Source: Amoeboradix gromovi X-113
Taxonomy: Eukaryota > Fungi > Sanchytriomycota
Direction of reading: 5' to 3'
NCBI GenBank assembly: GCA_018985225.1
Contig: JADGIF010000191.1
Coordinates: 1 to 15,440 of the forward strand
DNA length: 15,440 nucleotides
In this document: piece after piece, positions 1 through 15,440 of the stretch
How positions within the stretch are numbered: the first letter of the stretch is position 1
Layout of the letters: each line of letters starts with the position of its first letter
Notes under the pieces: generated by a model
What the model was told of the DNA's origin: nothing
Databases searched by the model: none
The model's input: only the letters and a program-made list of their open reading frames with translations
Position numbers and translations under genes: made by a program

Positions 1-259
1 TCCTTGAATAAATTGTGCAGATATTGCTGTCTAGGCATTGAAAGACATCTAATTCTTCCATGTTTGGACCAGTTCCTCAGTGTTGATGAATGTATGCTGT
101 ACCTGTTAATTATTTATTTAATTTACCATTTGCAAAAAGGAAGAATATCGAGTATTTGAGCTATTAGAAAAATCTGGAAAAGTCATGAAATTATATAAAA
201 ATGCATACAAATTCGCGATAAATGATTTATTCAAGAAAACAATCGAGCTGTGAAAATGA
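1..259 (-). mobile_element. Copy A: left end + TnpA-HTH part of non-autonomous IS607/Fanzor element (runs off window edge)
   Basis: Collinear, high-identity match to 9490-9781 and to the reverse complement of ~12414-12587. The minus strand translates RYSIHSSTLRNWSKHGRIRCLSMPRQQYLHNLFK (IS607 TnpA-like HTH reading into the Fanzor FK.. frame). Confidence 0.85.
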
Positions 260-306
260 AGCTTTGTACCACGTAAGATGCATGGGAAATTAATCTCCTT
301 GAAATT

Positions 307-1230
307 ATGCTTCTATTAGTAGCAATTTCACTTTTTGCCTCATTGATTAAAGATGACCAACAAAATTTGAAACAGACTAAACCAATGAGGATATTAACTC
401 AAAATCTGTATTTAAGGCCGCCGCTTATATCTACTTTACATGGCGATTATAAAGATGAAAGATTAGAGCAGTTTAAAAATATTCTCGGCGATTATGACAT
501 CATATGTTTACAAGAATGTTTTAGCTCTTATTCAAAAAGAGTAGAGGGCCTGATAGAATACGCAAAATTACAGGGGTTTCACAGTGCTCTGGGTCCCGGA
601 AGAAACATCCGTAAAGGTACGATTTGTGATTCTGGGCTACTGATTCTTAGCAAATATAATATACTGGAGACTGAAACTATAATATATTCGACAGGTGCAC
701 ACTCAGACAAATGGTGTTCCAAAGGTGCAGTTTCTATCAAAATTGAGGTTTCCAACGTACCTGTATATATTTTCAACACTCATTTGCAAGCGTCATATAA
801 ATTAGATTTGCAAGAAAATGACAAAGTTGTTCAAATAAGAAAAGCCCAACTACATGAATTTAAGGATTTTGTCAACAGAGTAGCTTCAGTTAAGGAGGAC
901 AAAGTCGTCATTTGCGGTGATTTTAATATTAACAGCAGAGCGCACAGATTTGAATATTCAACCCTGCTAGATATCATGGGTAAGGATGAATATCTCTTAG
1001 AACCTGCATCTAATTCAATAACATATTACCCTTGGAAATACAGATTCTCTGGCATTGCAGATGATAATGAAAAGGAACGTTTAGATTACATTTTCTACAA
1101 AAATTTTAGGTCGGAAAAAGCTCATGTGCATGATAAAGAGCATTTAGAACAAAGATGGAAGAGCTTATCTGACCATTTTGCAGTTTCTATAAATTTACTT
1201 TTTGATTACTTCTTACTTATTTCTTTATAA
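307..1230 (+). CDS. Endonuclease/exonuclease/phosphatase (EEP) family protein, neutral sphingomyelinase-like, with N-terminal signal/anchor
   Basis: Motifs RILTQN, DIICLQE, DSGLLILSKY, NTHLQA, GDFN, RLDYIF, LSDH; hydrophobic N-terminus. Confidence 0.85.
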   Translation: MLLLVAISLFASLIKDDQQNLKQTKPMRILTQNLYLRPPLISTLHGDYKDERLEQFKNILGDYDIICLQECFSSYSKRVEGLIEYAKLQGFHSALGPGRNIRKGTICDSGLLILSKYNILETETIIYSTGAHSDKWCSKGAVSIKIEVSNVPVYIFNTHLQASYKLDLQENDKVVQIRKAQLHEFKDFVNRVASVKEDKVVICGDFNINSRAHRFEYSTLLDIMGKDEYLLEPASNSITYYPWKYRFSGIADDNEKERLDYIFYKNFRSEKAHVHDKEHLEQRWKSLSDHFAVSINLLFDYFLLISL

Positions 1231-1565
1231 ACTTTTTCAATGCTTTTCGGAAAATAAGAATACCCCATCGAAGTTGTTAATGTCAACCAAGCTATAAACT
1301 TGTGTCTCGGTAAAACTTTAAAACACAAAAGCGATCCTACTGTCATAATCCAGAACGAAGGAACTATGTTCTGTTGTTCTGCTTTGATAATAAAGCTTGG
1401 TGCATTTTCATAAGTTTGAAAAGCATATTGCTCCGCAGCCAATAAGGGGTTTCTGATATCTTTGGTGAAGTCCTTAAAGTTATGATAGACAGAGGATCGA
1501 ACTTTAAAGGTAGAATTGGATATGTATTCTCGCATATCATCAAACAGGTTCCTCGGAGCTGACAT
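1206..1565 (-). CDS. Small membrane protein, possibly MICOS Mic26/Mic27 (ApoO)-like
   Basis: 119-aa ORF with two hydrophobic segments separated by a basic PRHK linker and followed by YFP. TTGAAA motif at the start as in neighbouring genes. Family call is tentative. Confidence 0.55.
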   Translation of the reverse strand: MSAPRNLFDDMREYISNSTFKVRSSVYHNFKDFTKDIRNPLLAAEQYAFQTYENAPSFIIKAEQQNIVPSFWIMTVGSLLCFKVLPRHKFIAWLTLTTSMGYSYFPKSIEKVYKEISKK

Positions 1566-1703
1566 TTCAAGGAGAGAATGGTATTATACAATTTTATGAG
1601 CAGGATCCAAAGACTCATGCCAGTAAAGCTGGTGTATGATCTCAGTATTTTAATTCTGTTACTTGGCTTGAAATAGATTTACTCCATTTGAAACAATTCT
1701 TTT

Positions 1704-4189
1704 ATGAGCAGAACAATTTATGAGAGATCGAAGAAGATTTTGTTGGAATTAGAACAGCTGGCACCATTCCGAAATTACTTAGATTATATTGATAAAAGGT
1801 TGAGTAAAAATTCAGCTCCCATTCCATTTTCAGTCGCTTGTCCAGTTGAACAACTCGGCCCTTTGTATGTAAGCGCTACACCAATACATCTAGTAACTGG
1901 AAAACCAGATCCTGTGTCTGTTCTGTGGACTTTGACGCGTTCTGGAGATCCTTTATGCGTCTTGTTAAATTACTTAATACCGAAAGACAAAGTGATTGAG
2001 ATTAAAAACTGGGAAGAAGCTATGATGACGCAAAATCTAAATCAATGCAAGGCTCAAGTGTATTTTTGTATTATGCGATGTAGGAATGAACTTCATTGGG
2101 CAGAATCAGAGCTATTTTCTATTAGTGAACTATATCAAGATGATATAGCTGGATTTCTCAAGGTTTTATACACTTTTGAAAAGATTATTTCTAACTTAGT
2201 CGAAAAAAAGGTAATACTTGATGATAATAAATTGGAAAATCGTAAAAGTATATCCAGTGTTAAAAGTGGTGTTTCCAACCAATCTTTTGATGGTAATTTA
2301 AGTAAAGTGTTCATGGAATTTCTGCAGACTGAGAAGAAGTACGTAAAAGATCTTGAGAAGCTGTTAGACTATCAGATATATGTTGTTACTTTTAACGTAT
2401 TGAAACCTGAAACAGTTGAAATTTTATTTGCAAACTTGCCTTCTCTAGTGGACTTTCAAAGAAGATTTAGCATATGCACTGAAATATTAATGGACGACAC
2501 CAATGAAATAGATATGAGATTACGTATTGGTGCATTGTTTGTTCAAACGGAGACTGCGTTTTCTGTGTATGACGGCTTTTGTAGGAATTACAACAAAGCA
2601 TTGGAAATTACCGATACTGAGTCTGTAGCACTTTCTCAAGCTAATCATTTAATGGAGTGTTCTTACGAGTTACCGTCTTACTTGATAAAGCCAATCCAAC
2701 GTATTTGTAAATTCCCTCTTTTAATAAATGTACTTCATACTGATATAGGAGATAATCAAGCAGTCCAAATTAGATCCAGAATCATTAATATGCAAAGAAT
2801 TACAACTTGGATTAAAAAGCATTAAAAAGGCAGCTGATAGAGTAAACGAAGTGCGCAGGAAGCAAGAGAACTTGGCCATAAAAGAAGATTTAGAAAAGAG
2901 AGTTGACGAATGGAAGGGCCACGACCCTGCGTCTTTTGGTGATTTGTTACTTCATGACAAGTTTCTAATGCTTGTCAATGATACAGAACGTGAGTTACTT
3001 GTGTACCTGTTTGAAAGAATAGTATTATGCTGTAAGGAAGTACAAAATACTTCTGTGCTAAGGGCATTTAAGCAGAAAACAAACGCTCCTAAGTCTGTAT
3101 TTCAAATCAAAGGACGCATTTGGATAGGAAATGTAAGCGGTGTAGTAAACTGCACTACAAAAGGTATAAAAAACTAATTTAGAAGAATTTATGCTCAAGG
3201 TATTCTGGAGAAGCCAAGAAATGGAATCTTTCACTCTTAAGTGCAGAAATGAAGAGCAACTTAAATTATGGCAAATTACGTTAGAGAAGTATTTGGAGAA
3301 ATTAAAGGACAAGAAAAGAAAGAAGCAGAGTATAGGGCCTGCTTCAAGACAATCCCCAAAAATTGAAATAGACGACGATTATCAAGGGGGTAGAATTAAG
3401 CCTGCTAGGCCGCCGCCGCCGCCTGATTTTGAGATCAAGGAATCACCAATACCTACAGGAAAGTCATACTTTGACTCTTTAGAAGATAAACAAGAAAATG
3501 ACTCTATCAAACTGGACACTTCCTCGCAAAAAAGAAGGTCTTCATTATCCTTTGCTGCTCAAATGCCATCTCCTATACCCTCATATAAACCACCACCGCC
3601 ATACGACTATCCACACATATTTTCTAATGAGGGACTTCCTAAAGAAGAAAAGAAGACCGTTAACAAGGCACCGCCAAGACCTAGCCCTCCACCCCTAATT
3701 AAATTAGACGAAGTGGTACAGCCGCTTGGGTTCAGCAATGGATTTTCCAATCTAGAGAGGCCCAAGTCATCGGTACCTGCTACCCCAACACGAATACAAA
3801 CTAACTCAACAGAAAACGAGACTGCCTACATCTCTCCTAGAAAGGCACCTGTACCACCTGTAAGTGACAAGTTTAGAGTGAGGGCATCTACTGATTCAAG
3901 CATGGGCAAAAGCATCACACCTACATCTGCAAAGCCACAGCAGATAAAAGTGAAGGTTCATACCCAGAGTGATAAATATGCACTAATTATAGAAAAGAAC
4001 GTATCTCTTATAGATTTTCATGCGAGGATACAAAGTAAAATACATATAAACAGATTTAGAGTAAAGTATGGCGACGAGGAGCGGCAGAATATATTTGTTA
4101 AGACAGATGAAGATGTGTTCAAAGCACTTGAATATGCTGACAGAAGAGAGGACAAAACGCTTAATGTATTTATCGTCGCCGATAACTGA
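1704..4189 (+). CDS. CDC24: Cdc42 guanine nucleotide exchange factor Cdc24/Scd1 (CH-DH-PH-Pro-rich-PB1); join(1704..2729,2749..3163,3183..4189), 815 aa
   Basis: Cdc24 CH domain (DPVSVLW..GDPLCVLLN, ELFSISELY), DH (EFLQTEKKYVKDLE; YLIKPIQRICKFPLL), PH (FGDLLLHD..VYLFERIVLCCKE), PB1 (IKVKVH..VKYGDEE). Three ORFs join in frame after removing two 19-nt introns. Confidence 0.93.
2730..2748 (+). other. 19-nt spliceosomal intron
   Basis: GTACTTCATACTGATATAG with CTGAT branch-like motif; removal gives PLLIN|EIIKQ..AADRVNEVRRKQEN, restoring the DH C-terminal helix. Confidence 0.85.
3164..3182 (+). other. 19-nt spliceosomal intron
   Basis: GTATAAAAAACTAATTTAG with CTAAT branch motif; removal joins the PH halves in frame (CTTK-EEFMLKVFW). 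Confidence 0.85.
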
Positions 4190-4289
4190 TTGAATAAACC
4201 ACTTTTCATGATCATTTGAACTTTATCACTCTAATAGTTCTTGTTGCTAGAGTTTAGTAACAGAATGAGAGTTATTATCGTCTATGACA

Positions 4290-4690
4290 ATTTTCTAAGA
4301 TTGTTGGCAAGAATGTGTCATTTGAAGACATTTCCAACCGATGTTGAATAAAATTGTCTGAATTCAAAAACTTTGTGAAATGACGCTTAAATGCAAAGAA
4401 AGGGAAACTACTTCGGTATAATGTCATAAAGCATTTACTAATTCAAAGTGTATCATGTGAGTAACTTTAAGGAAACCAACTTGTAGCCATAAAAATGCAG
4501 AAACTATGATTTGGAACTTGATGAGGACCAAATGACACAGAAGATCATTACTTAGGACATGTGCATGCCTACTTGTTACCGCTTCAGGGTAGCGCAAGAT
4601 TTGGAAATTACTGTAACGGTTTGACTGGAGCTGCCAGTTTCTTTATGGAGATCCTTGATATTTTAGATAACAAGGACTTTCAATGAGGAG
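4290..4690 (+). mobile_element. Copy F: diverged IS607/Fanzor element relic with intact right end
   Basis: 4383 onward translates TLKCKERE..KAFTNSKC (cf. KFKCKQRG..ESFTSQTC). 4585-4690 aligns without gaps to the right end of copy B and ends in GAGGAG. The 5' boundary is approximate. Confidence 0.8.
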
Positions 4691-4751
4691 TTTAATAAAT
4701 TGAAATATTAAAAAAACATTTTAATCCTCTTGAAACTAACAGCATTAAGTA

Positions 4752-7700
4752 ATGAAAAACATACCGATATCATTGGTGATAAAGGGAAAAGAGAATGCAA
4801 TGTCAACTACAAAATACAAGGTGTATAACATATTTATCAAATTCTTTTGGGAGCAATTCTCAAATTATGCCAATTTATTCTTTTTTATAACTGCATTGAT
4901 TCAACAGATACCAGACGTATCACCGCTATCACCATGGGCCACGCTTGTGCCACTAACATTTGTAATATTTGTAAGTTTTATTAAAGAGATGGTAGAAGAT
5001 TACAAACGATATACATTCGACAAATCAGAGAACGTAAAAATGCAACTAGTAGTCACCCAGAGCGATACATTGATAGATCACAACAAGACGTCTAGATGCA
5101 AAAGGATGGAGTTGAGCGCTGGTAATATAGTAAAGGTACTGGAAAACGAATCGATTCCAGCCGATATAATTATACTGTGTGCTAGTGATGCGGAAGCATT
5201 TGTAGACACCATGGCATTGGATGGGGAAACTAACTTGAAATGCAAGTCTACATTACTACGGACTAACCAACTATGCAAGATCAACTCAATCGAATGTGAA
5301 GTAGAGTCTCCGAATCCTAACATCGATGGTTTCAATGGCAAATTGACTGCTAACAAGAAAGTATTTAACTTGAGTCTATGCAATTTTATACCACGAGGAT
5401 GTACGCTGAAGAACACTAAATATATTTATGGACTAGTGGTATATACTGGTAATAACAGCAAGATAATATTAAATAGTCAAGAAACACCTATTAAAACATC
5501 CAAGGTAATGAAGAGTACTAATAATTACCTAATAGTGCTTATTTTGTTACTTGGCCTCATGGCTTTAATTAGCGCTGTTGGACAATTCCCTTTTCAGTCC
5601 AGCTATACAATAAACAACAAAACTGCTCTTCAGATGTTCAAAGACTTTTTAACATTCATTGTTCTGCTTAACAATATCATTCCTATCTCATTGATTGTTA
5701 CTGTAGAAGTGGTGAAGACGTTTTTAGCTCTATTCATAAATAACGACATTAAAATGACTGCAAATGTTAAGCGTAGTTCTCTGGTCGAAGAACTTGGCCA
5801 AATAGAGTACATATTTAGCGATAAGACAGGAACTTTAACCCAGAATGTCATGGAATTACAGCAAATAACAATAGTAGATCAAACCTATTCCAATGACAAT
5901 CACTTTGGTGGTATTGTAATGAACAAGTCGCTGGAAAGCTTTATATTTTTGGTCATTTTAAGTGCTTGCCATACCGTGGTAGTAGTTAATGATAATGAGT
6001 ACCAGGCAAGTAGTCCCGATGAATTGGCGCTGGTGAATGCATCAAAGTTAATGGGATTTGAATTACTGTCTCGTACAATGAATACTGTAACAATAAGACA
6101 CCATCACGATGAGCTGGTAATTGAGATATTACACATTATCGAATTTACTAGTGATCGCAAAAGAATGACCATGCTTTGTAAAGTAAAAGAAGACTATTAC
6201 GTGCTGTGCAAAGGTGCAGATAGTGTTATATTACCATTGTGCAATTCAAACAACAAGATAAATGAGCAATTGGATGTTTATAGTAACGAGGGATTGAGAA
6301 CACTCTGCTGCGCATATAGACCAATAAGCAAAAGCAATTCATTAAACTGGACCACATGCCATAAGAGCGCAACAACTTTAGATGAGAAAAGTAGATTAGA
6401 AAGAGAGCTTGAAAGCAACTTGACAATATTAGGATGTACTGGAATAGAGGATAAGCTTCAGGATAGTGTTAGTGAGACTATTGAGCTGTTGAGACACGCT
6501 AATATCAAGTTGTGGGTCTTGACGGGTGATAAGCTGGAAACTGCTATAAACATTGGTTACAGTTGCAAAGTGTTAACACATGCAATGGAACTGTTGATAT
6601 TCAACTTTGAAGACGAGGATACATTTAAGCACAACTTGCAGAAATACCACGCCATGTTTAAATATAAAAAACCCAATTTTAACTTGGATACTACGAGATT
6701 TCAAAAATTAAAGAATTTCTTTGTTGGTGTTTCGCAAGACACATTTGATTATACAAGTCAGGGCAATCCATTAGCACTAGTTATAACAGGACAATCTCTT
6801 AAGTACGCGATGAAAAACCAGGAGCAGTTCTTAAAGTTGGCTTGCTTGTGTAAAACTGTTATATGTTGTAGAGTATCACCGCTGCAGAAATCGGAAGTTG
6901 TTGGTCTAGTTAAAAGGTATCTGAATAAGATTACATTGGCCATTGGTGATGGCGCTAATGATGTGTCCATGATTCAAGAAGCACATATAGGGATTGGTAT
7001 AATGGGCAAGGAGGGTAGTCAGGCTTCTAGGACTAGCGATATATCTATAAGCGAGTTTAAAGCACTCGGCCAGCTGCTACTAGTTCACGGAGTATGGAAC
7101 CATCATAGAATATCTAAATTGGTGTTATTTTTCTTTTATAAAAATATTGCACTGTTTTTGACTCAATTTTGGTTCGCTTGTACAAATTACTTCAGCGGTC
7201 AGTCTATTTATGAGAGTTGGATTGCTTCACTGTACAATGTTTTGTTTACAGCTTTTCAACCAATGTATATTGGCCTTTTTGAACAAATAGTAAGTATATC
7301 TATAATATACAAGTATCCCCAGCTCTATAAAAGTGGTCAAATGGGTACTTTTTTTAGTCCCAAGGTGTTCTGGTCCTATATCTTTAATGCTATATTCCAT
7401 AGTGTAACTTCTTTTTTCATTATATATGCCGTGTACGACGCTGATACCGAGTATAATGGCAACACAAGCGGCCTTTACATGATTGGAGTAGTCATGTATA
7501 CTAGCCTGTTGTTGACGGTCAACTTAAAAGCAGCTATTATTGTCAAGTATTTTAACATTAACGCAGTTGGTGGAATTGGCTATTTTATGTGTCATTAATT
7601 GGCAGTATTGTGCTATGGTTTGCGTTTTTATATACGTACAGTAGTATGGCAGTTAGCCTTAAATTTGGGTATGAGTTGGTAGGTGTAAGTGAAATACTGC

Positions 7701-8008
7701 TTTCAAATCCAAAATTCTACATAGTGATAGCAATGATACCAGCTGTCAATCTATTCCGAGATGTGTTTTGGAAGATTTACAAGAGAATGTTTCACTATGA
7801 ACCATATCATATTGCACAAGAAATACAAGCAATAGAACTTAAACCAATACTAAAACCAAAGATCATAAGAGTAGTAGACAAGATACAAAAGAAGCTACCA
7901 AAAATATCAGGGTACGCGTTCTCACAAAGTGATAAGAGTACATTAGAGAGATTAAGGCCCATTGAAGAAACACAACTGGTAGATATGAATGAACTAGAAA
8001 GGGAATAA
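4752..8008 (+). CDS. DRS2: P4-type phospholipid-translocating ATPase, Drs2/ATP8A-like; join(4752..7546,7567..8008), 1078 aa
   Basis: DGETNLK, IPISL, DKTGTLT, SPDE, TGDK, GDGAND and the C-terminal GYAFSQ motif typical of Drs2/ATP8A. Confidence 0.9.
7547..7566 (+). other. 20-nt spliceosomal intron
   Basis: GTATTTTAACATTAACGCAG with TTAAC branch-like motif; removal gives KAAIIVN-WWNWLFYVSLIGSIVLWF, in frame with ORF 7589..8008. Confidence 0.85.
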
Positions 8009-8021
8009 ATCTTCACGTTTA

Positions 8022-8033
8022 AATAAATTTATT
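8022..8033. terminator. Palindromic bidirectional polyadenylation signal AATAAATTTATT
   Basis: Lies in the 31-bp gap between the convergent stops of the ATPase and MICU-like genes; reads AATAAA on both strands. Confidence 0.5.
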
Positions 8034-8039
8034 AAACAA

Positions 8040-8882
8040 TTAAAATTCCAAAGATTCTTTAGCCTTTTTAAAGCAATGAACTAGTTTTAATTCATTGCGA
8101 GAATCAAACTTGGATTCAAAGAAATTGATGATTTCTTTGTTGTCTAGAAATCCACTCTTGTCTGTATCCAGCAGCTGAAATAATAAAGAACAAGTATTGG
8201 TTGAGACAGTAAAATTGCTAGAAGCTGAAGCAGCAACAATTGCCCTTTCAAATAATGGAAAATCGATGTTTTTGGGACCAAGAAAAGCTAAAACATCATG
8301 TAGCTTTTCATTTTCATTCAGCAGCTTCCAAAGATCAGAAAATTCCTTGAAAGTTAGAGAATCGCAGTTAATGTTTCCGTGGTGTTTCTTAATAGAATTA
8401 GGCAGAGGTTTGGCTAACATCAATAGTTGTGCGACTTTTAAAGGCTCAATTTTATTGTTTACAGCATGAGCTCTGAATTTTATCAAGCAGACAGTATCCT
8501 GAAGTTTTTCAATCCAGGTTTGAAAATCCTTATAAGACATGTCTTTTTCAACAACTGAAATCGCATTCATTTCTTGTCTAGTTAGAACTTGATTACTATC
8601 AAGGTCTAATGTTTTAAATGCCAACAGTAATCTGCGTTTTGGGGTATTTAACAGTTCGCAAAGTACCACAAATTGATCTAGAGTCAAAGACTCTGGAATT
8701 AAACCATCTAATGACTTTTCATTTTCAACTTTATATCCGACAAAGTACTTCAGAATATCTGACCTCTGGAGCTTGTCATCCACAGAGTAATAATTATACA
8801 AATGCTTGTATGTGTCCTGATTATGTAATTGGATTACTGGAACAGATGCTGCGATAGATCGAATTAATAGTCGAGCAAACAT
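8040..8882 (-). CDS. MICU1-like mitochondrial calcium uptake EF-hand protein
   Basis: Presequence-like N-terminus; LLNTPKRRLLLAFKTLDLDSNQVLTRQE, KLQDTVCLIKF, LTFKEF and LFQLLDTDKSGFLDNKE parallel the MICU1 EF-hand blocks. Confidence 0.75.
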   Translation of the reverse strand: MFARLLIRSIAASVPVIQLHNQDTYKHLYNYYSVDDKLQRSDILKYFVGYKVENEKSLDGLIPESLTLDQFVVLCELLNTPKRRLLLAFKTLDLDSNQVLTRQEMNAISVVEKDMSYKDFQTWIEKLQDTVCLIKFRAHAVNNKIEPLKVAQLLMLAKPLPNSIKKHHGNINCDSLTFKEFSDLWKLLNENEKLHDVLAFLGPKNIDFPLFERAIVAASASSNFTVSTNTCSLLFQLLDTDKSGFLDNKEIINFFESKFDSRNELKLVHCFKKAKESLEF

Positions 8883-8982
8883 TGTAACAGACGATGAATT
8901 TTATTAAAATTAATGCTTGTTAACTCTTCTTTCTAGATAATTTGAATGGGATAAACCCCAATCCTCGGCATTCATCAATGAC

Positions 8983-9175
8983 ATGTATTTCTAAGCCTCA
9001 CAATCCTGAACATTTCAGATATAACGAAATAACTAATACAAATAGTATACACTCATCGACCTTAAGAAACTGCCCAAGAATGGGAAAACTAGATTTCTTT
9101 CAACATCGTCTCATAACACTTCAAGTCAAGTGTAAAGAGAGAAGAAAAACGATAGTTGAATATAATGAAGGGTTA
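8983..9175 (+). mobile_element. Copy D: diverged TnpA-HTH/Fanzor relic truncated at the right end of copy B
   Basis: Translates NPEHFRYNEITNTNSIHSSTLRNCPRMGKLDF..KCKERRKTIVEYNEG, matching copy B's NPEYVKSKEITSRYSIHSSTLRSWSKHGRIRF..KCKQRGKIIIEFNES. Confidence 0.8.
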
Positions 9176-9305
9176 CTCCTCGTTAAAAGTCCAGATTTCC
9201 GAGAAAATCGAGAATTTCCACAGAGAAACTAGCAATGCTAGATGCTCCGTTACAGTGATTGCTCACGCTCTCACTACCCTGAGGCGGGATTGAATAAGGA
9301 TGCAG
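9176..9305 (-). ncRNA. Putative omegaRNA scaffold (copy B)
   Basis: Conserved, hairpin-forming right end downstream of RuvC-III; position matches TnpB/Fanzor omegaRNAs. Expression is not shown. Confidence 0.6.
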
Positions 9306-9497
9306 ATACTTGTATATGTTCGTTGCTGCGATATGATCTCTATCTATCTCCAAATGACACTTTGTACAAGTTCAGGTTTCTAAATTGGTTTTCTTTAGAG
9401 TACCACACCTTGTACATGTCTGACTAGTAAATGATTCATTAAATTCTATTATAATCTTTCCTCTTTGTTTACACTTGAACTTCAAGCGTTTCTTGAA
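9183..9497 (-). pseudogene. Fanzor2/TnpB C-terminal fragment (NE.FTS, Zn ribbon, RuvC-III)
   Basis: FKKRLKFKCKQRGKIIIEFNESFTSQTCTRCGTLKKTNLET*TCTKCHLEIDRDHIAATNIYKY...; one in-frame TGA at 9372-9374. Confidence 0.9.
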
Positions 9498-9652
9498 TAA
9501 ATTGTACAGATATCTCTTCTAGGCATTAAAAGAAATCTAATTCTTCCATGCTTGGACCAGCTCCTCAGTGTTGAAGAATGAATGCTGTACCTGCTAGTTA
9601 TTTCTTTAGATTTGACATATTCAGGATTACATCCATTAATTCCATACATCAT
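9498..9652 (-). pseudogene. IS607-family TnpA N-terminal MerR-like HTH fragment
   Basis: MMYGINGCNPEYVKSKEITSRYSIHSSTLRSWSKHGRIRFLLMP then (frameshift) RYLYNL; resembles the TLRxW..GxI....P...R.Y HTH of IS607 TnpA. The serine recombinase catalytic domain is absent. Confidence 0.7.
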
Positions 9653-10070
9653 TTGCGAAAAGGAAGAACATCGAGTATTTAAGCTATTAGAAAAATCTGG
9701 AAAAGTCATGTAATTATACAAAAATGCATACAAATTCGCGATAAATGATTTATTCAAAAAAATAATCGATCTGCGCAATGATATTTTTATCATTTATCGT
9801 TTTCGAATTAAGTTAAGGTAGTAACTGCTTATCTTCCCACGCAACAGAACCAGATGGTAGCTAAATTATCTACTATAACTGCTTCCCAGTCTACTTTTTA
9901 CAGAGTGTGTCCCACATGCTCATCGCTGTTACCAAGAATGAGTCAGTTAACATTTAGTAGCATTCTAATTATGTACAGTACTGTTAATAGTTTTTAACGT
10001 TAACATCAGCAGACCTGTTGTCGCAGATACTTGCACTTGGCTAGCTCGCATCCTAAAGGTTTTTGTAACA

Positions 10071-10388
10071 ATGGACGGTCAAGACTTGCAGCGCTTACAA
10101 CATATTGCGGAAGTCGAAATGCAAGAAAAGTTACAAGAGACAACCTCTGAATCTGAAGATGGAAGTGTGGAATCCATGACAATCTTGCAAGAAGAAATTG
10201 AAATGTTGGAAACAGATCCGCAAGGCAAACCTGAGATTCTTACAACCAAAACTCGTGGTAAGAAGATTGATTTCAAATTAGCTGAGCAGAGAATGAGTGA
10301 AGAAATCAACTTGTTCAATTCTAAAAACAATCTTGATCCAATGGAAGTGGAGGACGAGGATGAAGAATATGTTGCTGCTGAAGAATAA
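10071..10388 (+). CDS. Hypothetical acidic protein (true 5' end uncertain; frame open from 9969)
   Basis: 105-aa Glu-rich ORF; AATAAA overlaps the stop as in the ATPase gene; stop is 7 bp from the convergent COG2 stop. Confidence 0.55.
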   Translation: MDGQDLQRLQHIAEVEMQEKLQETTSESEDGSVESMTILQEEIEMLETDPQGKPEILTTKTRGKKIDFKLAEQRMSEEINLFNSKNNLDPMEVEDEDEEYVAAEE

Positions 10389-10395
10389 ATGTATT

Positions 10396-12390
10396 TTACT
10401 TAAAGTAAGCGGCCATGTCAGCAACAAACGCCTTCATTATTGGTAACTCAGCCTCATACTCCTTTATTAACTCTATGTTAGTTTGCTTTAGCTCAAACTC
10501 GATGTTTGTACGGGTGCTGAATATTCCGGAATACATAGTGCAGCAGTCTACGTAAATCTGGGCTCTCATTTTGTCCTCATCCGAAATGCCAGTCGTGTTA
10601 GATTTCTTCTTGAATCTCTTTAAACTTTCTTCTGTTTTCCGAATTGTTGCTAGCACTTGGTTTGCAATGTCTATTATGATCAGCACAAGTTCTTCCTTAA
10701 CTTTGTCATTACTGTATATGTTAGTGCTGTAAATCTTTTTAATTTCCAACTCCAGGTTTGCATAGTGACTGAACAACGGGTTGAGCAACTTAGTAAACTC
10801 GATCACGTATGAGGAAGGTACAGTACTTACTTCTTTAGAACCCATTCTTACGATACTTGGTATATTCCTTATTTGTTGGATTACTGTCATAGTAACATCA
10901 ATGTGACGCCGTAAAGCACTTTGAGCAACTTTAACAAACAAACCCTGTAGCCTACTAAATCGCTGATTAATTAGTCTTTTGTACATTTCACTAACATTTA
11001 CTGGAACAGATGTATGAGATATGTTGTTTAATTGTAGCAATATCTTTAGTAAGTCATCGAAAACCAACTCAATTACATTCATATTTAAATCATTATAGTT
11101 CTTTGTATTTTGAAGCAGATTGTCAAATACCAAGAACAGCAAATGAGTTGATATATCTAACGTCTGTGGCATTATTTGGATAGATTGTATCTTGTCCAGA
11201 CACTCATTTAATTTGCTAAAATACTCGAAATGAAAAGTGTTGTTTTTAACTACAGCAAGAGGGTCAAAATTTATCGACAGCTTCTTTGTTATTTCAGATT
11301 TTTGGACATTAGCAAAAGGAATAGGGTTGAACTTTCGCTTGTATACAATAAAACCAGGATGTGACTTGAATTCCTTTTCAAGCTGAAACGGATCGACGAA
11401 ATTAGATTTAAAAAATTGGATGAAGTACAACGATTTTTGGTAATCTTTGGTATAGTCTAAGTTATTTGAAGCCATGAGTTTCTGATCAGTTATGTGTTTT
11501 ACAACATTTTGAAAAATAAAATCTAAAACTAAAGCGACTCGCTCTTTGTGAGAGGCAAAAGGGTAGATAGTACGAGATACTAGTAAAGGGATGCCCTTGA
11601 GGTAGTTTTCAATGACCCCATATTTCATCTCAAAGTTTGATTGATTAACGCTGGCAGAAAGAGTTTTTTGAAGATCGGAAATCGGCTCAGCAATTAACTT
11701 GTTCAGTATTACAGGAAAGGCATCGGCCCATTTTCCCGACAATACAAGGCATTTAAATGCTATTTGTAAGCAATCTGCAAAGCCGTCTTGAACTGCAAAT
11801 TGAATTTTAAACTGCTGAAATAAATCGACCAAAAATCGACATTCCTGATCAATCAAGCTACGAAATGGCTCGTATTGCTTAATAAAGACTTGTTGTCTGT
11901 CTTCAGTAGACGACTCTATATACGACTTGGCCCTATTTGCAATTAATAAATAGTATTCCAGCATTTCTAGTTTAGCATAGTCTAGCATATCTATAGGCTT
12001 TTCTATCTTATTGTTTTTCAAGTAGTCCAAATCCAATTTTAAAAAGTGTTCATTCAGCAATATCTGTTTTTGCTGTTTAATCTTCACTAGTTTACCCTCT
12101 GGGCTCTCTGCATCTACATCTCCAGAAACCATAGAAGTATTCTTAATCATTTTATCTACAACTTGCAATTCTTCATCTATTTTATCACTTATGTTTAATC
12201 CTACATTAATCTTGTGCCCCAATTCCTGAAGCTTGTTATAATTCAAGTCCAATACAGATACTATATCCTTTTGTACTTGATCTAGGTACGAGTCCAATTG
12301 TTCTTCAAAATCCTTGGTTACTTCAAGTTCGTTTAGCACTTCATCTACATTAAACGCCTTGCTCTGAAATAGGTTGCGGTTGGTCAACAT
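10396..12390 (-). CDS. COG2: Conserved oligomeric Golgi complex subunit 2
   Basis: N-terminal FNVDEVL..LDSYL..IVSVLDLNY; C-terminal IRNIPSIVRMGSKEVSTVPSSYV and VLATIRKTEESLKRFKK..SDEDKMRAQIYVD, characteristic of COG2. Confidence 0.85.
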   Translation of the reverse strand: MLTNRNLFQSKAFNVDEVLNELEVTKDFEEQLDSYLDQVQKDIVSVLDLNYNKLQELGHKINVGLNISDKIDEELQVVDKMIKNTSMVSGDVDAESPEGKLVKIKQQKQILLNEHFLKLDLDYLKNNKIEKPIDMLDYAKLEMLEYYLLIANRAKSYIESSTEDRQQVFIKQYEPFRSLIDQECRFLVDLFQQFKIQFAVQDGFADCLQIAFKCLVLSGKWADAFPVILNKLIAEPISDLQKTLSASVNQSNFEMKYGVIENYLKGIPLLVSRTIYPFASHKERVALVLDFIFQNVVKHITDQKLMASNNLDYTKDYQKSLYFIQFFKSNFVDPFQLEKEFKSHPGFIVYKRKFNPIPFANVQKSEITKKLSINFDPLAVVKNNTFHFEYFSKLNECLDKIQSIQIMPQTLDISTHLLFLVFDNLLQNTKNYNDLNMNVIELVFDDLLKILLQLNNISHTSVPVNVSEMYKRLINQRFSRLQGLFVKVAQSALRRHIDVTMTVIQQIRNIPSIVRMGSKEVSTVPSSYVIEFTKLLNPLFSHYANLELEIKKIYSTNIYSNDKVKEELVLIIIDIANQVLATIRKTEESLKRFKKKSNTTGISDEDKMRAQIYVDCCTMYSGIFSTRTNIEFELKQTNIELIKEYEAELPIMKAFVADMAAYFK

Positions 12391-12587
12391 TTGGTTTCAA
12401 AAATCTAAAAATATCATTGCGCAGATCGATTGTCTTTATGAATAAATCATTTATCGCGAATTTGTATGCATTTTTGTACAATTTCAAGACTTTTCCAGAT
12501 TTTTCTAATAGCTTAAACACTCGATATTCTTCCTTTTCGCAAATGGTAAATCGATTCTAAACAAATAACTAACAGGTACAGCATACA

Positions 12588-12989
12588 AAGACGTATGATC
12601 TGATATACTTACCCTCGTTCAATACGAGCCAGATGCTAAGTAGCTTGTCGAGCAAGGTCGCAAGAAACATGGCTACAATGTCCCATTACGCATTCAAGGA
12701 ACTCTTGAAGTTCAAGTGTAAACAAAGAGGAAAGATGATGGTCGAAAGCAATGAATCATTTACTAGTCAGGCTTGTACAAGCTGTGGTACTATAAAGAAA
12801 TCCAATGTATGAACATACAGATGTACAAATTGTCATTTGAAGATAGATAGAGACGTATACATCAAGTATCTGCATTCTTATTCAATCCCGCCTCAGGGCA
12901 GTGAGAGCGTGAGCGATCACTGTAACGGAGAAACTAGCATTAGTTTCTCTATGGATATTCTCGATTTTCTCGGAAATCTGGACTTTTAA
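12588..12989 (+). pseudogene. Fanzor2 C-terminal fragment (RuvC-II region to RuvC-III)
   Basis: KTYDLIYLPSFNTSQMLSSLSSKVARNMATMSHYAFKELLKFKCKQRGKMMVESNESFTSQACTSCGTIKKSNV*TYRCTNCHLKIDRDV...; TGA at 12810-12812 and a 15-nt deletion after DRD relative to copy B. Confidence 0.92.
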
Positions 12990-12996
12990 CGAGGAG
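12870..12996 (+). ncRNA. Putative omegaRNA scaffold (copy C)
   Basis: Stems CCC/GGG (12887-12898), CAGTGA/TCACTG with GUGA tetraloop (12899-12922), GAGAAACTA/TAGTTTCTC (12928-12949); ends GAGGAG. Confidence 0.62.
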
Positions 12997-13155
12997 AGCA
13001 CTTTTAATTAAACATGACATATCATAATATTACCAGTAGTATCTTTCAATGGCACTAATTACTAAAAATTTTTGATCGTAGAGACTAAGAATGTTCTCTT
13101 TTCTCGCTTGTAGCAAACGGCCGAAAAGACATGGGCAGAATTTTATGAAGCATAT

Positions 13156-13254
13156 GAGTAGTAGAAGCATGAAAAAGCACTGTAACGAAGCGACAGGTGT
13201 TTGAGTTTCTCTGTACAAAGTTTATTATTTCTAGGAAACCAAGACTTTGATGAG
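13156..13254 (+). mobile_element. Copy E: diverged solo right end / omegaRNA-like relic
   Basis: Aligns to the copy B right end with two 1-nt gaps; anchors CACTGTAACG, AGTTTCTCTGT, TTTCT.GGAAA, GACTTT. Confidence 0.72.
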
Positions 13255-13279
13255 TTACTATATTTATTAACCAAACGTA

Positions 13280-15019
13280 CTAGTATTCGCTGTCCATTTC
13301 AATTACATGCACTATTTGACTACATTTATCTCCATTTTCCAGGTCTACCAGTCTTTTTAGTAGATCATCAACCACCATCTCTAATTTGGTCGGAAGTAGT
13401 AAATAAACGTGCTCAAAGTATACTTTACTGGACTGCTTAGCTAGCTGTCTGTATTTGTAACCTCTGACTATCTCATCAATTCTTTTAAATCTCAAGTCCT
13501 GTTCTGCAATGACTCTGGCCAAATCTATAATTTCCATCAAATCATGCGTGTTGCCCCCATTGTCTTTGTCATATATCCAATGCATCAATCTAATGTTAAC
13601 GCTGCCCATCCCATTTATTGACAAATGCTTAGTTCTGTTGAAATTAGGACATAATGATGGCAATACAACTGGCATCACATACACTTCCAATACTTTTTTA
13701 AGTCTATACTCCAACATTTCCATATAAGCGACAACCATTCTCATGTCCATAACACGTTCTACCAATGGTCCGCACATTAGTTTCTGACTAGTTAATATAG
13801 GAATGTCAGGGTAATGAACGAAAGCATAATAACCAACTATAATGAAGTTGCTAGCGTAATATAATGAATATTGATTTTCCACTAACTTATCGAGCACTTG
13901 GATAACCAGTAGACTCACAAATTGATTATCCAATGGAATACTACCGAGAAGTGCATCCAGATCGACAATGCCAGTATAGTATAGATTTAGATCATGGTAC
14001 ATGTTATTGGCATGATCAACGTTGATAAAGTTATGTGTAATCAGATTCAAAAGAGTAGTAGGATACTTTGAAAAGAACAAGTACAACGGATCTAATTTTG
14101 TATAAAAGCAAAGATTGTTAAAATTATCAAACAGCCAAGAGTTAGAATCAGTTAATATCAGAGACCATATCTGTCGAATTGATTTTGCACCATTGATTGA
14201 CCCAATACACAGGCTATCCCAGGATGTAGAGGGGGTCATAAGATTAGGCAAATTACTTGTAGATTCTGATAGATTGCAAGATTTAGCTGAGTTTGAGCTG
14301 GATATTGGGCTACCAAGAGAAGCTGATGTTAAAGAAAAGCTCAAGGTATGGTTGATTAACAGTAAAAAGCATGGATAGAAGTAGAAAGCAATTCCGACTG
14401 ATTTAAATGGTAATAACCTGTCCAGCAGATAGGCCAGTCTGGGGTGTTTACGGGTCAAGCTTTGTTTAGAATATATACAATTTGGAATACATATAGAGCA
14501 TATAGAGATATGCCAAGACGATATGTAATGGATGACATTATTAGTGTTAATCATCTTGCAGTTATCGTCTTTGGACTTACAAATTATACAGATCCGTGAT
14601 TCAACGTATTGCAGATACATTAGTTCCAACTGGGACCACCATTGATCTTTATGGGCAAGGAACATTACATCCTGAAAAGGGGACTTGGCAAATTGATAGC
14701 TTAATGACAAATGCGGATAAGACTTATCGGTCAGTAAGATGTCGTTTAGAAGAATAAATTTGTAAAACATGTGTTTACCTAATGGCTGTGTTAATAGGTG
14801 CAATCTTTTACAAGATATTCTTAGACGCATTATATCTACTATATCTAGCTTTTTAAGAATTTGCCACAACAAATCATCACCAATTATTAAAATTGAAGGG
14901 GATTGGCAACCATGATGAGAATGTCTTCTTTTATGACAATTTCGAATTTCAGCCATTGAAAAATCCAGAGATCGCGATTGTATTGATCTGGGATTGTGTT
15001 CTGCAAATCTAGTCATCAT
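13280..15019 (-). CDS. F-box domain protein with two CxxC motifs
   Basis: IGDDLLWQILKKLDIVDIMRLRISCKRLHLL fits an F-box; CIIC and CSIC follow; 579-aa uninterrupted ORF. Confidence 0.7.
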   Translation of the reverse strand: MMTRFAEHNPRSIQSRSLDFSMAEIRNCHKRRHSHHGCQSPSILIIGDDLLWQILKKLDIVDIMRLRISCKRLHLLTQPLGKHMFYKFILLNDILLTDKSYPHLSLSYQFAKSPFQDVMFLAHKDQWWSQLELMYLQYVESRICIICKSKDDNCKMINTNNVIHYISSWHISICSICIPNCIYSKQSLTRKHPRLAYLLDRLLPFKSVGIAFYFYPCFLLLINHTLSFSLTSASLGSPISSSNSAKSCNLSESTSNLPNLMTPSTSWDSLCIGSINGAKSIRQIWSLILTDSNSWLFDNFNNLCFYTKLDPLYLFFSKYPTTLLNLITHNFINVDHANNMYHDLNLYYTGIVDLDALLGSIPLDNQFVSLLVIQVLDKLVENQYSLYYASNFIIVGYYAFVHYPDIPILTSQKLMCGPLVERVMDMRMVVAYMEMLEYRLKKVLEVYVMPVVLPSLCPNFNRTKHLSINGMGSVNIRLMHWIYDKDNGGNTHDLMEIIDLARVIAEQDLRFKRIDEIVRGYKYRQLAKQSSKVYFEHVYLLLPTKLEMVVDDLLKRLVDLENGDKCSQIVHVIEMDSEY

Positions 15020-15159
15020 GTTTTATAATTACGACGCCACGCCATCAACAAAATTTATAGTTTCACCAAATAGGGGTTAAACAGCAACAAAATTATTTTG
15101 TTTGAACAAGTAATTATAGCTCTCATATATAAGATATCTTTTGCGGAAAATATTAAAAT

Positions 15160-15290
15160 ATCAAGCGTTTTTAAATGTATTGTAAGCTCTATTGAAATTA
15201 TTCTTGGTGCTAAGATATATCAGTAATTTCTCGAGTAAAAATATGCTGCAGATCTATTACCGGTTTTTTAAGATTTATCATACTCAGGAT
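15160..15290 (-). mobile_element. Copy G: highly decayed TnpA-HTH/Fanzor junction relic
   Basis: Collinear anchors with copy B (+ strand): TCAAGCGTTT 15161, ATTCTT 15200, ATGCTG 15243, AGATTT..CATA.TCAGGAT 15271-15290; the minus strand reads PEYDKS. Confidence 0.55.
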
Positions 15291-15440
15291 GGGATGATTG
15301 GAAACATTTGGGACACCAAATATAAAAACTAGACTGACTCGTTTTTAAAGGAGGTGCACCATACGCAGGAAATGCTATCATTAATAAAAGATCTTCTATT
15401 ATACCAATTTTCTTTCATTGATTGTATTCCTCTTTTCAAA

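What the first reader, a model, noticed from the sequence alone, without database searches (positions are those of the whole stretch)
1..15290. Seven copies of a miniature IS607/Fanzor2 element fill every large intergenic gap of a compact eukaryotic genome
Seen: copies at 1-259, ~4290-4690, ~8983-9175, 9176-9789, 12406-12996, 13156-13254 and ~15160-15290 share sequence. The two with both ends (~0.6 kb) carry a left end, a TnpA-like HTH, a Fanzor C-terminus and a conserved right end; divergence ranges from very close (A, B, C) to barely alignable (G). Known: Fanzor2 nucleases derive from IS607 TnpB and occur with serine-recombinase TnpA. Inference: a long-lived, very high-copy non-autonomous family mobilised in trans, keeping the cis ends and RNA scaffold but not the enzymes. 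About one copy per 2 kb would be striking if genome-wide.
Basis: partly seen in the sequence, partly recalled or inferred. Interest (0 to 1): 0.92.

Follow-up and report, generated by a model that had tools for sequence, protein, structure and literature searches.

The report
High-copy mini IS607/Fanzor2 transposon in fungus
A tiny algal-parasitic fungus carries at least 600 shrunken, enzyme-less copies of a bacterial-type jumping gene whose parent encoded an RNA-guided nuclease; their uniform ends show that this kind of element really did jump in a eukaryotic nucleus and predict the nuclease's target motif.

Summary
Largely confirmed. The window is from the sanchytrid fungus Amoeboradix gromovi. 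Six of the seven copies are real; G is not significant, and that gap holds instead the end of a second, TIR-bounded, Fanzor1-like family (~800 copies). The element is a 570-600 bp internal-deletion derivative of an IS607/Fanzor2 transposon: left end after RCAG, TnpA HTH remnant, Fanzor2 tail, right end in GGAG, no TSD or TIR, AG on both sides. The genome holds 604 right ends and 411 left ends (controls 0): one well-kept copy per ~17 kb, one per 4-8 kb with fragments, not one per 2 kb. An intact relative from a metagenome (65% Fanzor identity) has the same CAG and GGAG boundaries. Copies decay neutrally, but shared variants are synonymous-rich and assort almost freely, so the family is a recombining mosaic fed by coding donors. 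No intact direct parent was found. Best reading: mobilised in trans by serine recombinase, probably amplified by Fanzor homing (inferred). The system is known; this copy number, host and CAG motif were not found in papers. The scan noted this family before on other contigs (s1-523992).

The parts
1..247 (-). Copy A: left end and TnpA-HTH remnant (alpha junction, 29-nt deletion form), cut by the contig end; target CAG at 250-248
4381..4690 (+). Copy D: old copy (~70% identity), Fanzor tail and complete right end; degraded 5' half may reach back to ~4190
8931..9175 (+). Copy E: old internal fragment (alpha junction), no ends, cut where the right end of B begins
   Evidence: junction spanned by a 8,977-nt Logan contig with no differences
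9176..9770 (-). Copy B: full-length mini element, 595 nt, alpha junction; target CAG at 9773-9771
9520..9625 (-). TnpA N-terminal HTH remnant in B (53% identical over 34 aa to TnpA of intact relative L084)
9315..9506 (-). Fanzor2 tail remnant in B: shifted RuvC-II Glu, C4 zinc finger, RuvC-III Asp; one stop
   Evidence: (PF07282, 66 bits)
9176..9300 (-). Right end and predicted omegaRNA scaffold of B: first hairpin loop can pair with the last bases of the element (pseudoknot)
   Evidence: expression not tested
9774..9789 (-). 16-nt left flank of B, identical to the left flank of C (12406-12421, +) and unique to this pair; read as a local conversion or template-switch tract
12425..12996 (+). 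Copy C: full-length mini element, 572 nt, beta junction with 29-nt deletion and an 18-nt loss at RuvC-III; target CAG at 12422-12424
   Evidence: both flanks spanned by long Logan contigs
13156..13250 (+). Copy F: old right-end remnant (~68% identity)
15240..15293 (-).
15309..15440 (-). Not this family: right end of a second high-copy, TIR-bounded mini element with a Fanzor1-like tail, cut by the contig end

Best explanation
A family of non-autonomous, internally deleted IS607/Fanzor2 (IS607EU) elements. SHOWN: a ~2-kb parent (TnpA serine recombinase plus Fanzor2) lost its middle at several junctions, leaving 570-600 bp units with both ends; at least 600 copies sit at unrelated sites 3' of RCAG with AG on both sides and no TSD; after insertion they decay neutrally; they are mosaics of variants that arose under coding constraint. 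INFERRED from bacterial IS607 experiments: TnpA supplied in trans cut the unit out as a double-stranded circle at the AG core and put it back at new CAG sites; the parent's Fanzor2, loaded with an RNA that runs from the right end into the flank, cut the emptied site (predicted TAM CAG; the element's own GAG differs at -3 and escapes), and repair from the sister chromatid restored the donor, turning cut-and-paste into net gain. Ectopic conversion or template switching among hundreds of copies and coding parents reshuffled the alleles. The family looks quiet now.
For: 604 right ends, 411 left ends, reversed controls 0. CAG in 42-43 of 46 left junctions with A/G before it in 39 of 46, random flanks beyond, no TSD of 4 nt or more in any copy. 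Tail matches PF07282 and guided_TnpB; best solved structure is mimivirus Fanzor2 9B0L. Intact relative L084: IS607 TnpA plus DPG-type Fanzor2, 65% identical to the tail, 53% to the HTH, left boundary CAG (L083 and L084 diverge just upstream), right end GAGGAG; three further relatives end in AGGAG and one Logan contig stops exactly there. Pseudoknot pair changes on both sides between relatives: loop CCTC with GAGG, loop CCTA with TAGG. Singletons in the tail 14% synonymous (19% expected if neutral), variants in 4 or more copies 54% (Fisher p 4e-7). r2 falls from 0.23 to 0.03 with distance (permutation p 0.0005), ~80% of site pairs show four gametes; four compound markers occur in 12 of 16 combinations where a tree allows 5. 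Bacterial parallel TGGG TAM versus TCGG end (10.1101/2023.11.20.567912).
Against: No intact direct parent in the assembly: none of 12 resolvase loci matches the mini ends; a longer relative on contig C385 could not be fetched. No empty site, circle, RNA or activity was seen (no RNA run; one search shows no clean excision joint). No significant covariation within the family. About a fifth of copies end at the first AG and lose the pseudoknot partner yet inserted, so a working RNA was not needed for every jump. The assembly is from amplified DNA and 100-nt reads (PMC8371127), so long-range mosaics could partly be misjoins; the copies sampled were the best-scoring ones.
Confidence: 0.8

Rival explanations
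1. Transposase-only hitch-hiker: the minis spread by TnpA in trans alone (donor restored by ordinary repair or replication timing); the Fanzor tail and RNA scaffold persist only because they overlap the right end that TnpA needs.
For: Neutral decay and no covariation among copies; shortened right ends lacking the pseudoknot partner still inserted; TnpB is dispensable for IS607 transposition in E. coli (PMC3627910, PMC6188088).
Against: All junction types keep ~300 nt or more of 3' sequence, more than the tens of bases of end motifs known for IS607 ends; the target is RCAG rather than only AG, as expected if a nuclease TAM filters sites (Yoon et al.); both hairpin variants near the right end keep a stem. 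This rival shares the classification and differs only on Fanzor's role.
Confidence: 0.35
2. The mosaic pattern is an artefact of whole-genome amplification, short-read assembly and mutation hot spots; the real family is tree-like.
For: MDA plus 2x100 reads and SPAdes; many contigs end in these repeats; a simulation with extreme hot spots and a star phylogeny reaches 70% four-gamete pairs and r2 0.07 without recombination.
Against: Sites 11-30 nt apart, inside one k-mer, already show r2 0.09 and 83% four-gamete pairs; hot spots give no decay with distance and cannot repeat 29-nt and junction markers; the B/C shared flank is unique and lies on a long Logan contig for C. Both artefacts would have to act together.
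Confidence: 0.2
3. The minis are kept because they encode a small HTH-zinc-finger fusion protein (a repressor of transposition) or a host-used guide repertoire.
For: Alpha junction joins HTH and tail in frame; some copies are called as 110-125-aa proteins in EukProt.
Against: Only 2 of 46 copies have an open fused frame; copy-specific changes are neutral; the 29-nt deletion removes the HTH start in 19 of 46.
Confidence: 0.05
4. Ordinary MITE moved by a DDE transposase, or copies made by segmental duplication.
For: Fanzor2 captured by TIR transposons is known (Yoon et al.); IS607 fragments in eukaryotes were often segmental duplicates (PMC3673617); L009 and L014 share a flank.
Against: No TIR, no TSD, unrelated flanks in nearly all 46 copies, fixed CAG and GAG boundaries, TnpA remnant inside.
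Confidence: 0.02

Closest known systems
IS607EU / Fanzor2 elements (mimivirus ApmFz2 locus, Acanthamoeba ACa-1/2, ISvNY2A; PMC3627910, PMC10530073, PMC13565253)
   Same: HTH-serine recombinase plus Fanzor2 layout in the parent type, shifted RuvC-II Glu, no TIR or TSD; best PDB match 9B0L
   Different: Reported as few copies, mostly viral or fragmentary; here hundreds of non-autonomous deletion derivatives in a fungal nucleus, AG core and RCAG target instead of GG
Bacterial IS607 with TnpB (H. pylori IS607, ISXfa1, CboIStron; PMC6188088, 10.1101/2023.08.09.552727, 10.1101/2023.11.20.567912)
   Same: Core dinucleotide on both sides, target motif 5' of left end, right end differing from the target at -3, pseudoknot to the last bases
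   Different: Core AG not GG; eukaryotic host; mechanism not tested here
Fanzor 'ghost' loci of Spizellomyces punctatus (Saito et al. 2023, PMC10432273)
   Same: About 550-nt protein-less units keeping ends and omegaRNA region, proposed to work in trans, zoosporic fungal host
   Different: Those are Fanzor1, have 30-nt inverted repeats, number 134 and have tested RNAs; these are IS607-type, TIR-less, at least 600, RNA untested
[quoted passage not shown]
   Same: Horizontally acquired IS607 in eukaryotes including yeasts
   Different: That study found no evidence of transposition in any eukaryote; here hundreds of independent, precise junctions are such evidence

Membership tests
IS607 (non-autonomous derivative) | No terminal inverted repeats and no target-site duplication | tested here: met
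   46 copies: no TSD of 4 nt or more, 1 of 3 nt, 4 of 2 nt; ends unrelated
IS607 (non-autonomous derivative) | Same core dinucleotide at both junctions and a short target motif 5' of the left end | tested here: met
   CAG left in 42-43 of 46, right end in AG; same in relatives L083/L084
IS607 (non-autonomous derivative) | Derived from TnpA with N-terminal HTH and serine-recombinase domain | tested here: met
   HTH remnant matches TnpA of L084 (E 1e-10) and C542; no Pfam hit on its own
IS607 (autonomous element) | Intact serine-recombinase TnpA in the element | tested here: not met
   Catalytic domain deleted in all minis; resolvase loci belong to sister families
IS607 (non-autonomous derivative) | Phased short repeats at the ends bound by TnpA | tested here: inconclusive
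   One hexamer recurs at positions 1, 96 and 563 and another at 561 and 570; no clear phased array
IS607 (non-autonomous derivative) | Excision as a double-stranded circle with scarless donor joint | not testable with these tools
   No empty site or circle joint among Logan contigs; only one DNA run exists
Fanzor2 | RuvC-II Glu six residues before a C4 zinc finger, then RuvC-III Asp | tested here: met
   Consensus tail; PF07282 66 bits for B; PDB 9B0L best hit
Fanzor2 | RuvC-I DPG motif in a full-length nuclease | tested here: not met
   Deleted in minis; present in relative P0374 (full Yoon et al. pattern matches) and in C542. The minis derive from a Fanzor2 but do not encode one
Fanzor2 | Right-end RNA with pseudoknot between a hairpin loop and the bases before the guide | tested here: inconclusive
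   Pairing possible in all five lineages with one two-sided change; within-family covariation not above shuffles; no Rfam hit
Fanzor2 | Expressed omegaRNA and RNA-guided cleavage with a TAM | not testable with these tools
   No RNA data
Fanzor ghost loci (Spu-type) | Terminal inverted repeats around a protein-less omegaRNA unit | tested here: not met
   No TIR; works like a ghost but is not of that family
MITE | TIR plus TSD | tested here: not met

The most novel reading that the evidence does not exclude
An IS607/Fanzor2 system ran as a homing-assisted copy machine in a fungal nucleus: hundreds of mini copies each supplied a guide against its own empty CAG site to a shared Fanzor2, and the resulting breaks made the whole family recombine as one gene pool with its coding parents, alongside a parallel Fanzor1 family of similar size in a 10.5-Mb genome.
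Probability: 0.3. Interest if true: 0.78.

Novelty: new variant of a known kind. Interest (0 to 1): 0.55.

Why it matters
Whether IS607 really transposes in eukaryotic nuclei, and what Fanzors do there, has been open (PMC3673617 found no evidence of transposition; PMC10432273 only proposes a trans role for ghost loci). Hundreds of independent, precise junctions give population-level evidence for serine-recombinase transposition in a fungus, and read out a target and predicted TAM (CAG, AG core) that can be tested with an intact relative. Published Fanzor counts reach about 122 loci per genome (PMC10530073) or 134 ghosts; this family has at least 600 in 10.5 Mb, about 3-4% of the assembly. The mini frames also inflate the predicted proteome. 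The components and the general model are known, the mechanism is not tested here, and the scan had already noted the family.

Tried and rejected
Copy G as a member: not above shuffles. E and F as two halves of one old element split by a B-genes-C cassette: the 160 nt between C and F do not match the missing middle (p 0.62). The B/C 16-nt extension as a subfamily left end: found only in B and C. C542 or families II/III as the direct parent: only protein-level or weak DNA similarity, different ends. Selected mini protein: rejected. RNA structure by folding: z -0.49 for B, alignment covariation near zero, Rfam none. L009/L014 shared flank as clean proof of exchange: weakened, since most of that flank is the second repeat family and only ~20 nt are unique. 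Read depth over B and C is hundreds of times the flanks but is not a copy number. The second family's tail has no Pfam or PDB match, so 'Fanzor1-like' rests on the motif by eye. Searches failed on input slips. No paper holding both Fanzor and Amoeboradix or Sanchytrium was found; Repbase could not be searched.
Full report
Host. A Fanzor protein from another contig of the same assembly is EukProt EP00835 Amoeboradix gromovi P004065, on a node of the same length as that contig, and two window proteins are in EukProt too. The assembly is 10.55 Mb in 1,319 contigs; the paper reports 10.5 Mb, from whole-genome amplification and 2x100 Illumina reads assembled with SPAdes (PMC8371127). The window holds ordinary fungal genes (EEP phosphodiesterase, CDC24, a P-type ATPase recognised by motif, an EF-hand protein, COG2, an F-box protein).

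The observation. Self-comparison and a profile built from 46 genome copies confirm six pieces: A 1-247(-), D 4381-4690(+), E 8931-9175(+), B 9176-9770(-), C 12425-12996(+), F 13156-13250(+). G scores 0.8 bits, a value reached by 3 of 30 shuffled or reversed windows. The last gap instead holds, at 15309-15440, the end of a second family with terminal inverted repeats: 1,576 matches to its terminal motif, about 800 elements, copies near 95% identical, with a tail that looks Fanzor1-like by motif.

Ends and copy number. A DNA search with B gave 948 candidates and 40 scored full-length matches at 83-89%. Aligned copies start right after CAG (42-43 of 46 at each position, A or G before it in 39) and end in ACGAGGAG, with random sequence beyond and no TSD. 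AG therefore stands on both sides, as the GG core does in bacterial IS607 (PMC6188088). About a fifth of copies stop 3 nt earlier, at the first AG. Pattern counts with up to three mismatches give 604 right ends and 411 left ends, reversed controls 0. That is one well-kept copy per ~17 kb and about 3-4% of the assembly. Counting old fragments in flanks of fetched loci gives 28 hits in 121 kb and about 6 in 46 kb, one per 4-8 kb; this window, at one per 2.6 kb, is richer than average.

What the pieces are. The 3' half encodes a Fanzor2 tail: Glu six residues before a C4 zinc finger, then the RuvC-III Asp; PF07282 and guided_TnpB match, and the best solved structure is mimivirus Fanzor2 9B0L. The 5' half encodes the first ~45 residues of TnpA. 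The clearest reference is metagenome locus L084, an intact IS607 TnpA plus DPG-type Fanzor2: 53% identical over the HTH and 65% over the tail. L083 and L084 diverge just upstream of CAG, and L084, L073, L081 and L082 carry AGGAG at the matching 3' place, where Logan contig L080 stops. So CAG and GGAG are clade-wide boundaries. They differ at position -3, as TGGG and TCGG do in CboIStron, where that difference protects the occupied site (10.1101/2023.11.20.567912). I therefore predict a CAG TAM; this is inference.

Parent. Twelve resolvase loci exist in the genome. C542 is a full-length sister element (Fanzor 671 aa open, about 54% to the tail; TnpA with a stop in the HTH). Families II and III (C459 and others) have other ends, CCG left and GGCG right by eye. 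None matches the mini ends. C385 carries the exact mini right end and a longer Fanzor piece that reaches RuvC-I, so longer members exist, but I could not fetch it. Near-identical full-length copies could also have collapsed in this assembly.

History of the copies. At least three deletion junctions exist: alpha (B, A, E), beta (C) and a longer-tailed form seen in EukProt proteins. Median identity over homologous columns is 88%, maximum 94%, so no very recent burst is seen in this sample. Copy-specific changes in the tail are 14% synonymous against 19% expected, variants shared by four or more copies 54% (p 4e-7). Copies decay neutrally, but their shared diversity arose in coding donors. Only 2 of 46 have an open HTH-zinc-finger fusion. 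Variants assort nearly freely: r2 is 0.23 within 10 nt and 0.03 beyond 250 nt (permutation p 0.0005), with about 80% of pairs showing four gametes. Tree simulations without recombination give 6-11% and r2 above 0.4 with even rates; only extreme hot spots on a star tree come near. Four compound markers occur in 12 of 16 combinations, where a tree allows five. B and C, inverted and 2.6 kb apart, share a 16-nt flank and an A at +1 found nowhere else together, yet differ in junction type, which reads as a local conversion tract. Misassembly could add long-range mosaics but not those inside one k-mer; I put real mosaicism at about 0.75.

RNA. The last ~125 nt fold into several hairpins, not better than shuffles and without significant covariation among copies, as expected for neutral decay. 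Across relatives the first hairpin loop and the last bases change together (CCTC with GAGG in minis and L084, CCTA with TAGG in L073, L081, L082), matching the pseudoknot described for IS607 TnpB and Fanzor2 RNAs (10.1101/2023.08.09.552727). This may be a single event. No RNA data exist.

How it most likely works. Shown: independent precise insertions at RCAG, loss of both enzymes, neutral decay, mosaicism. Inferred: TnpA in trans excised circles at AG and inserted them at new sites; Fanzor2 with right-end RNA cut the empty donor and sister-chromatid repair restored it (restorative homing, PMC13565253), giving net gain. Homing at an empty site does not by itself make mosaics; template switches during repair synthesis, or ectopic conversion among hundreds of copies and circles, are needed. 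The main rival is that TnpA alone sufficed and the RNA region is kept only as the transposase end.

Comparison and novelty. IS607EU/Fanzor2 elements and Fanzor ghost loci are known (PMC3627910, PMC10530073, PMC10432273). Gilbert and Cordaux found no evidence of IS607 transposition in eukaryotes (PMC3673617). Reported Fanzor counts reach 122 per genome, and 134 TIR-type ghosts in Spizellomyces. I found no paper on Fanzors in sanchytrids and could not check Repbase. The minis pass the tests for a non-autonomous IS607 derivative and fail, as expected, those for an autonomous element or a nuclease. Verdict: a new high-copy variant of a known system, with a testable target prediction; already noted by this scan on other contigs.

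Noticed in passing
window 15309-15440 (-); full copies in L027:2569-3022, L034:748-1139, L044:641-1100: Second high-copy family: 390-460 bp TIR elements with a Fanzor1-like tail (by motif only), 1,576 terminal-motif matches, ~95% identity; one of three full copies shows a 4-nt TSD.
   Followed up: partly
window 9885-9919: Short degenerate piece of the second family's terminal repeat (matches L019:137-171); explains the Logan contig break at 9889.
   Followed up: partly
L051:84-2099 (-) (contig C542): Full-length sister IS607/Fanzor2: Fanzor frame open for 671 aa and overlapping TnpA; TnpA has a stop in the HTH and the first zinc knuckle is one residue short.
   Followed up: partly
L064:990-2980 (contig C459) and L066-L072: Two more IS607/Fanzor2 families of ~2 kb; family II seems to use CCG left and GGCG right (again differing at -3); C459 has an open TnpA frame and one stop in Fanzor.
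   Followed up: partly
G000 contig C385:7345-8039 (-): Mini right end joined to a longer Fanzor piece that includes RuvC-I; best lead to the parent, not fetched.
   Followed up: no
P0123-P0128: Mini-element frames of 110-125 aa are listed as Amoeboradix proteins in EukProt, so the predicted proteome includes transposon debris.
   Followed up: yes
L073:350-439: A metagenome contig with a related Fanzor2 also carries two copies of the second family's terminal motif upstream, suggesting a related host or its virus.
   Followed up: no
L083 and L084: Two metagenome copies of the intact relative share the right flank but differ in the left flank; unexplained (assembly join or exchange).
   Followed up: no
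right-end hairpin, element positions ~527-555: Two common variants both form a stem at the same place, one a perfect 9-bp hairpin; could be selection or quasi-palindrome correction.
   Followed up: partly
window 10071-10388 (+): Small acidic 105-aa ORF with a weak histone-chaperone CHZ hit (E 0.03), tail to tail with COG2 between B and C.
   Followed up: no
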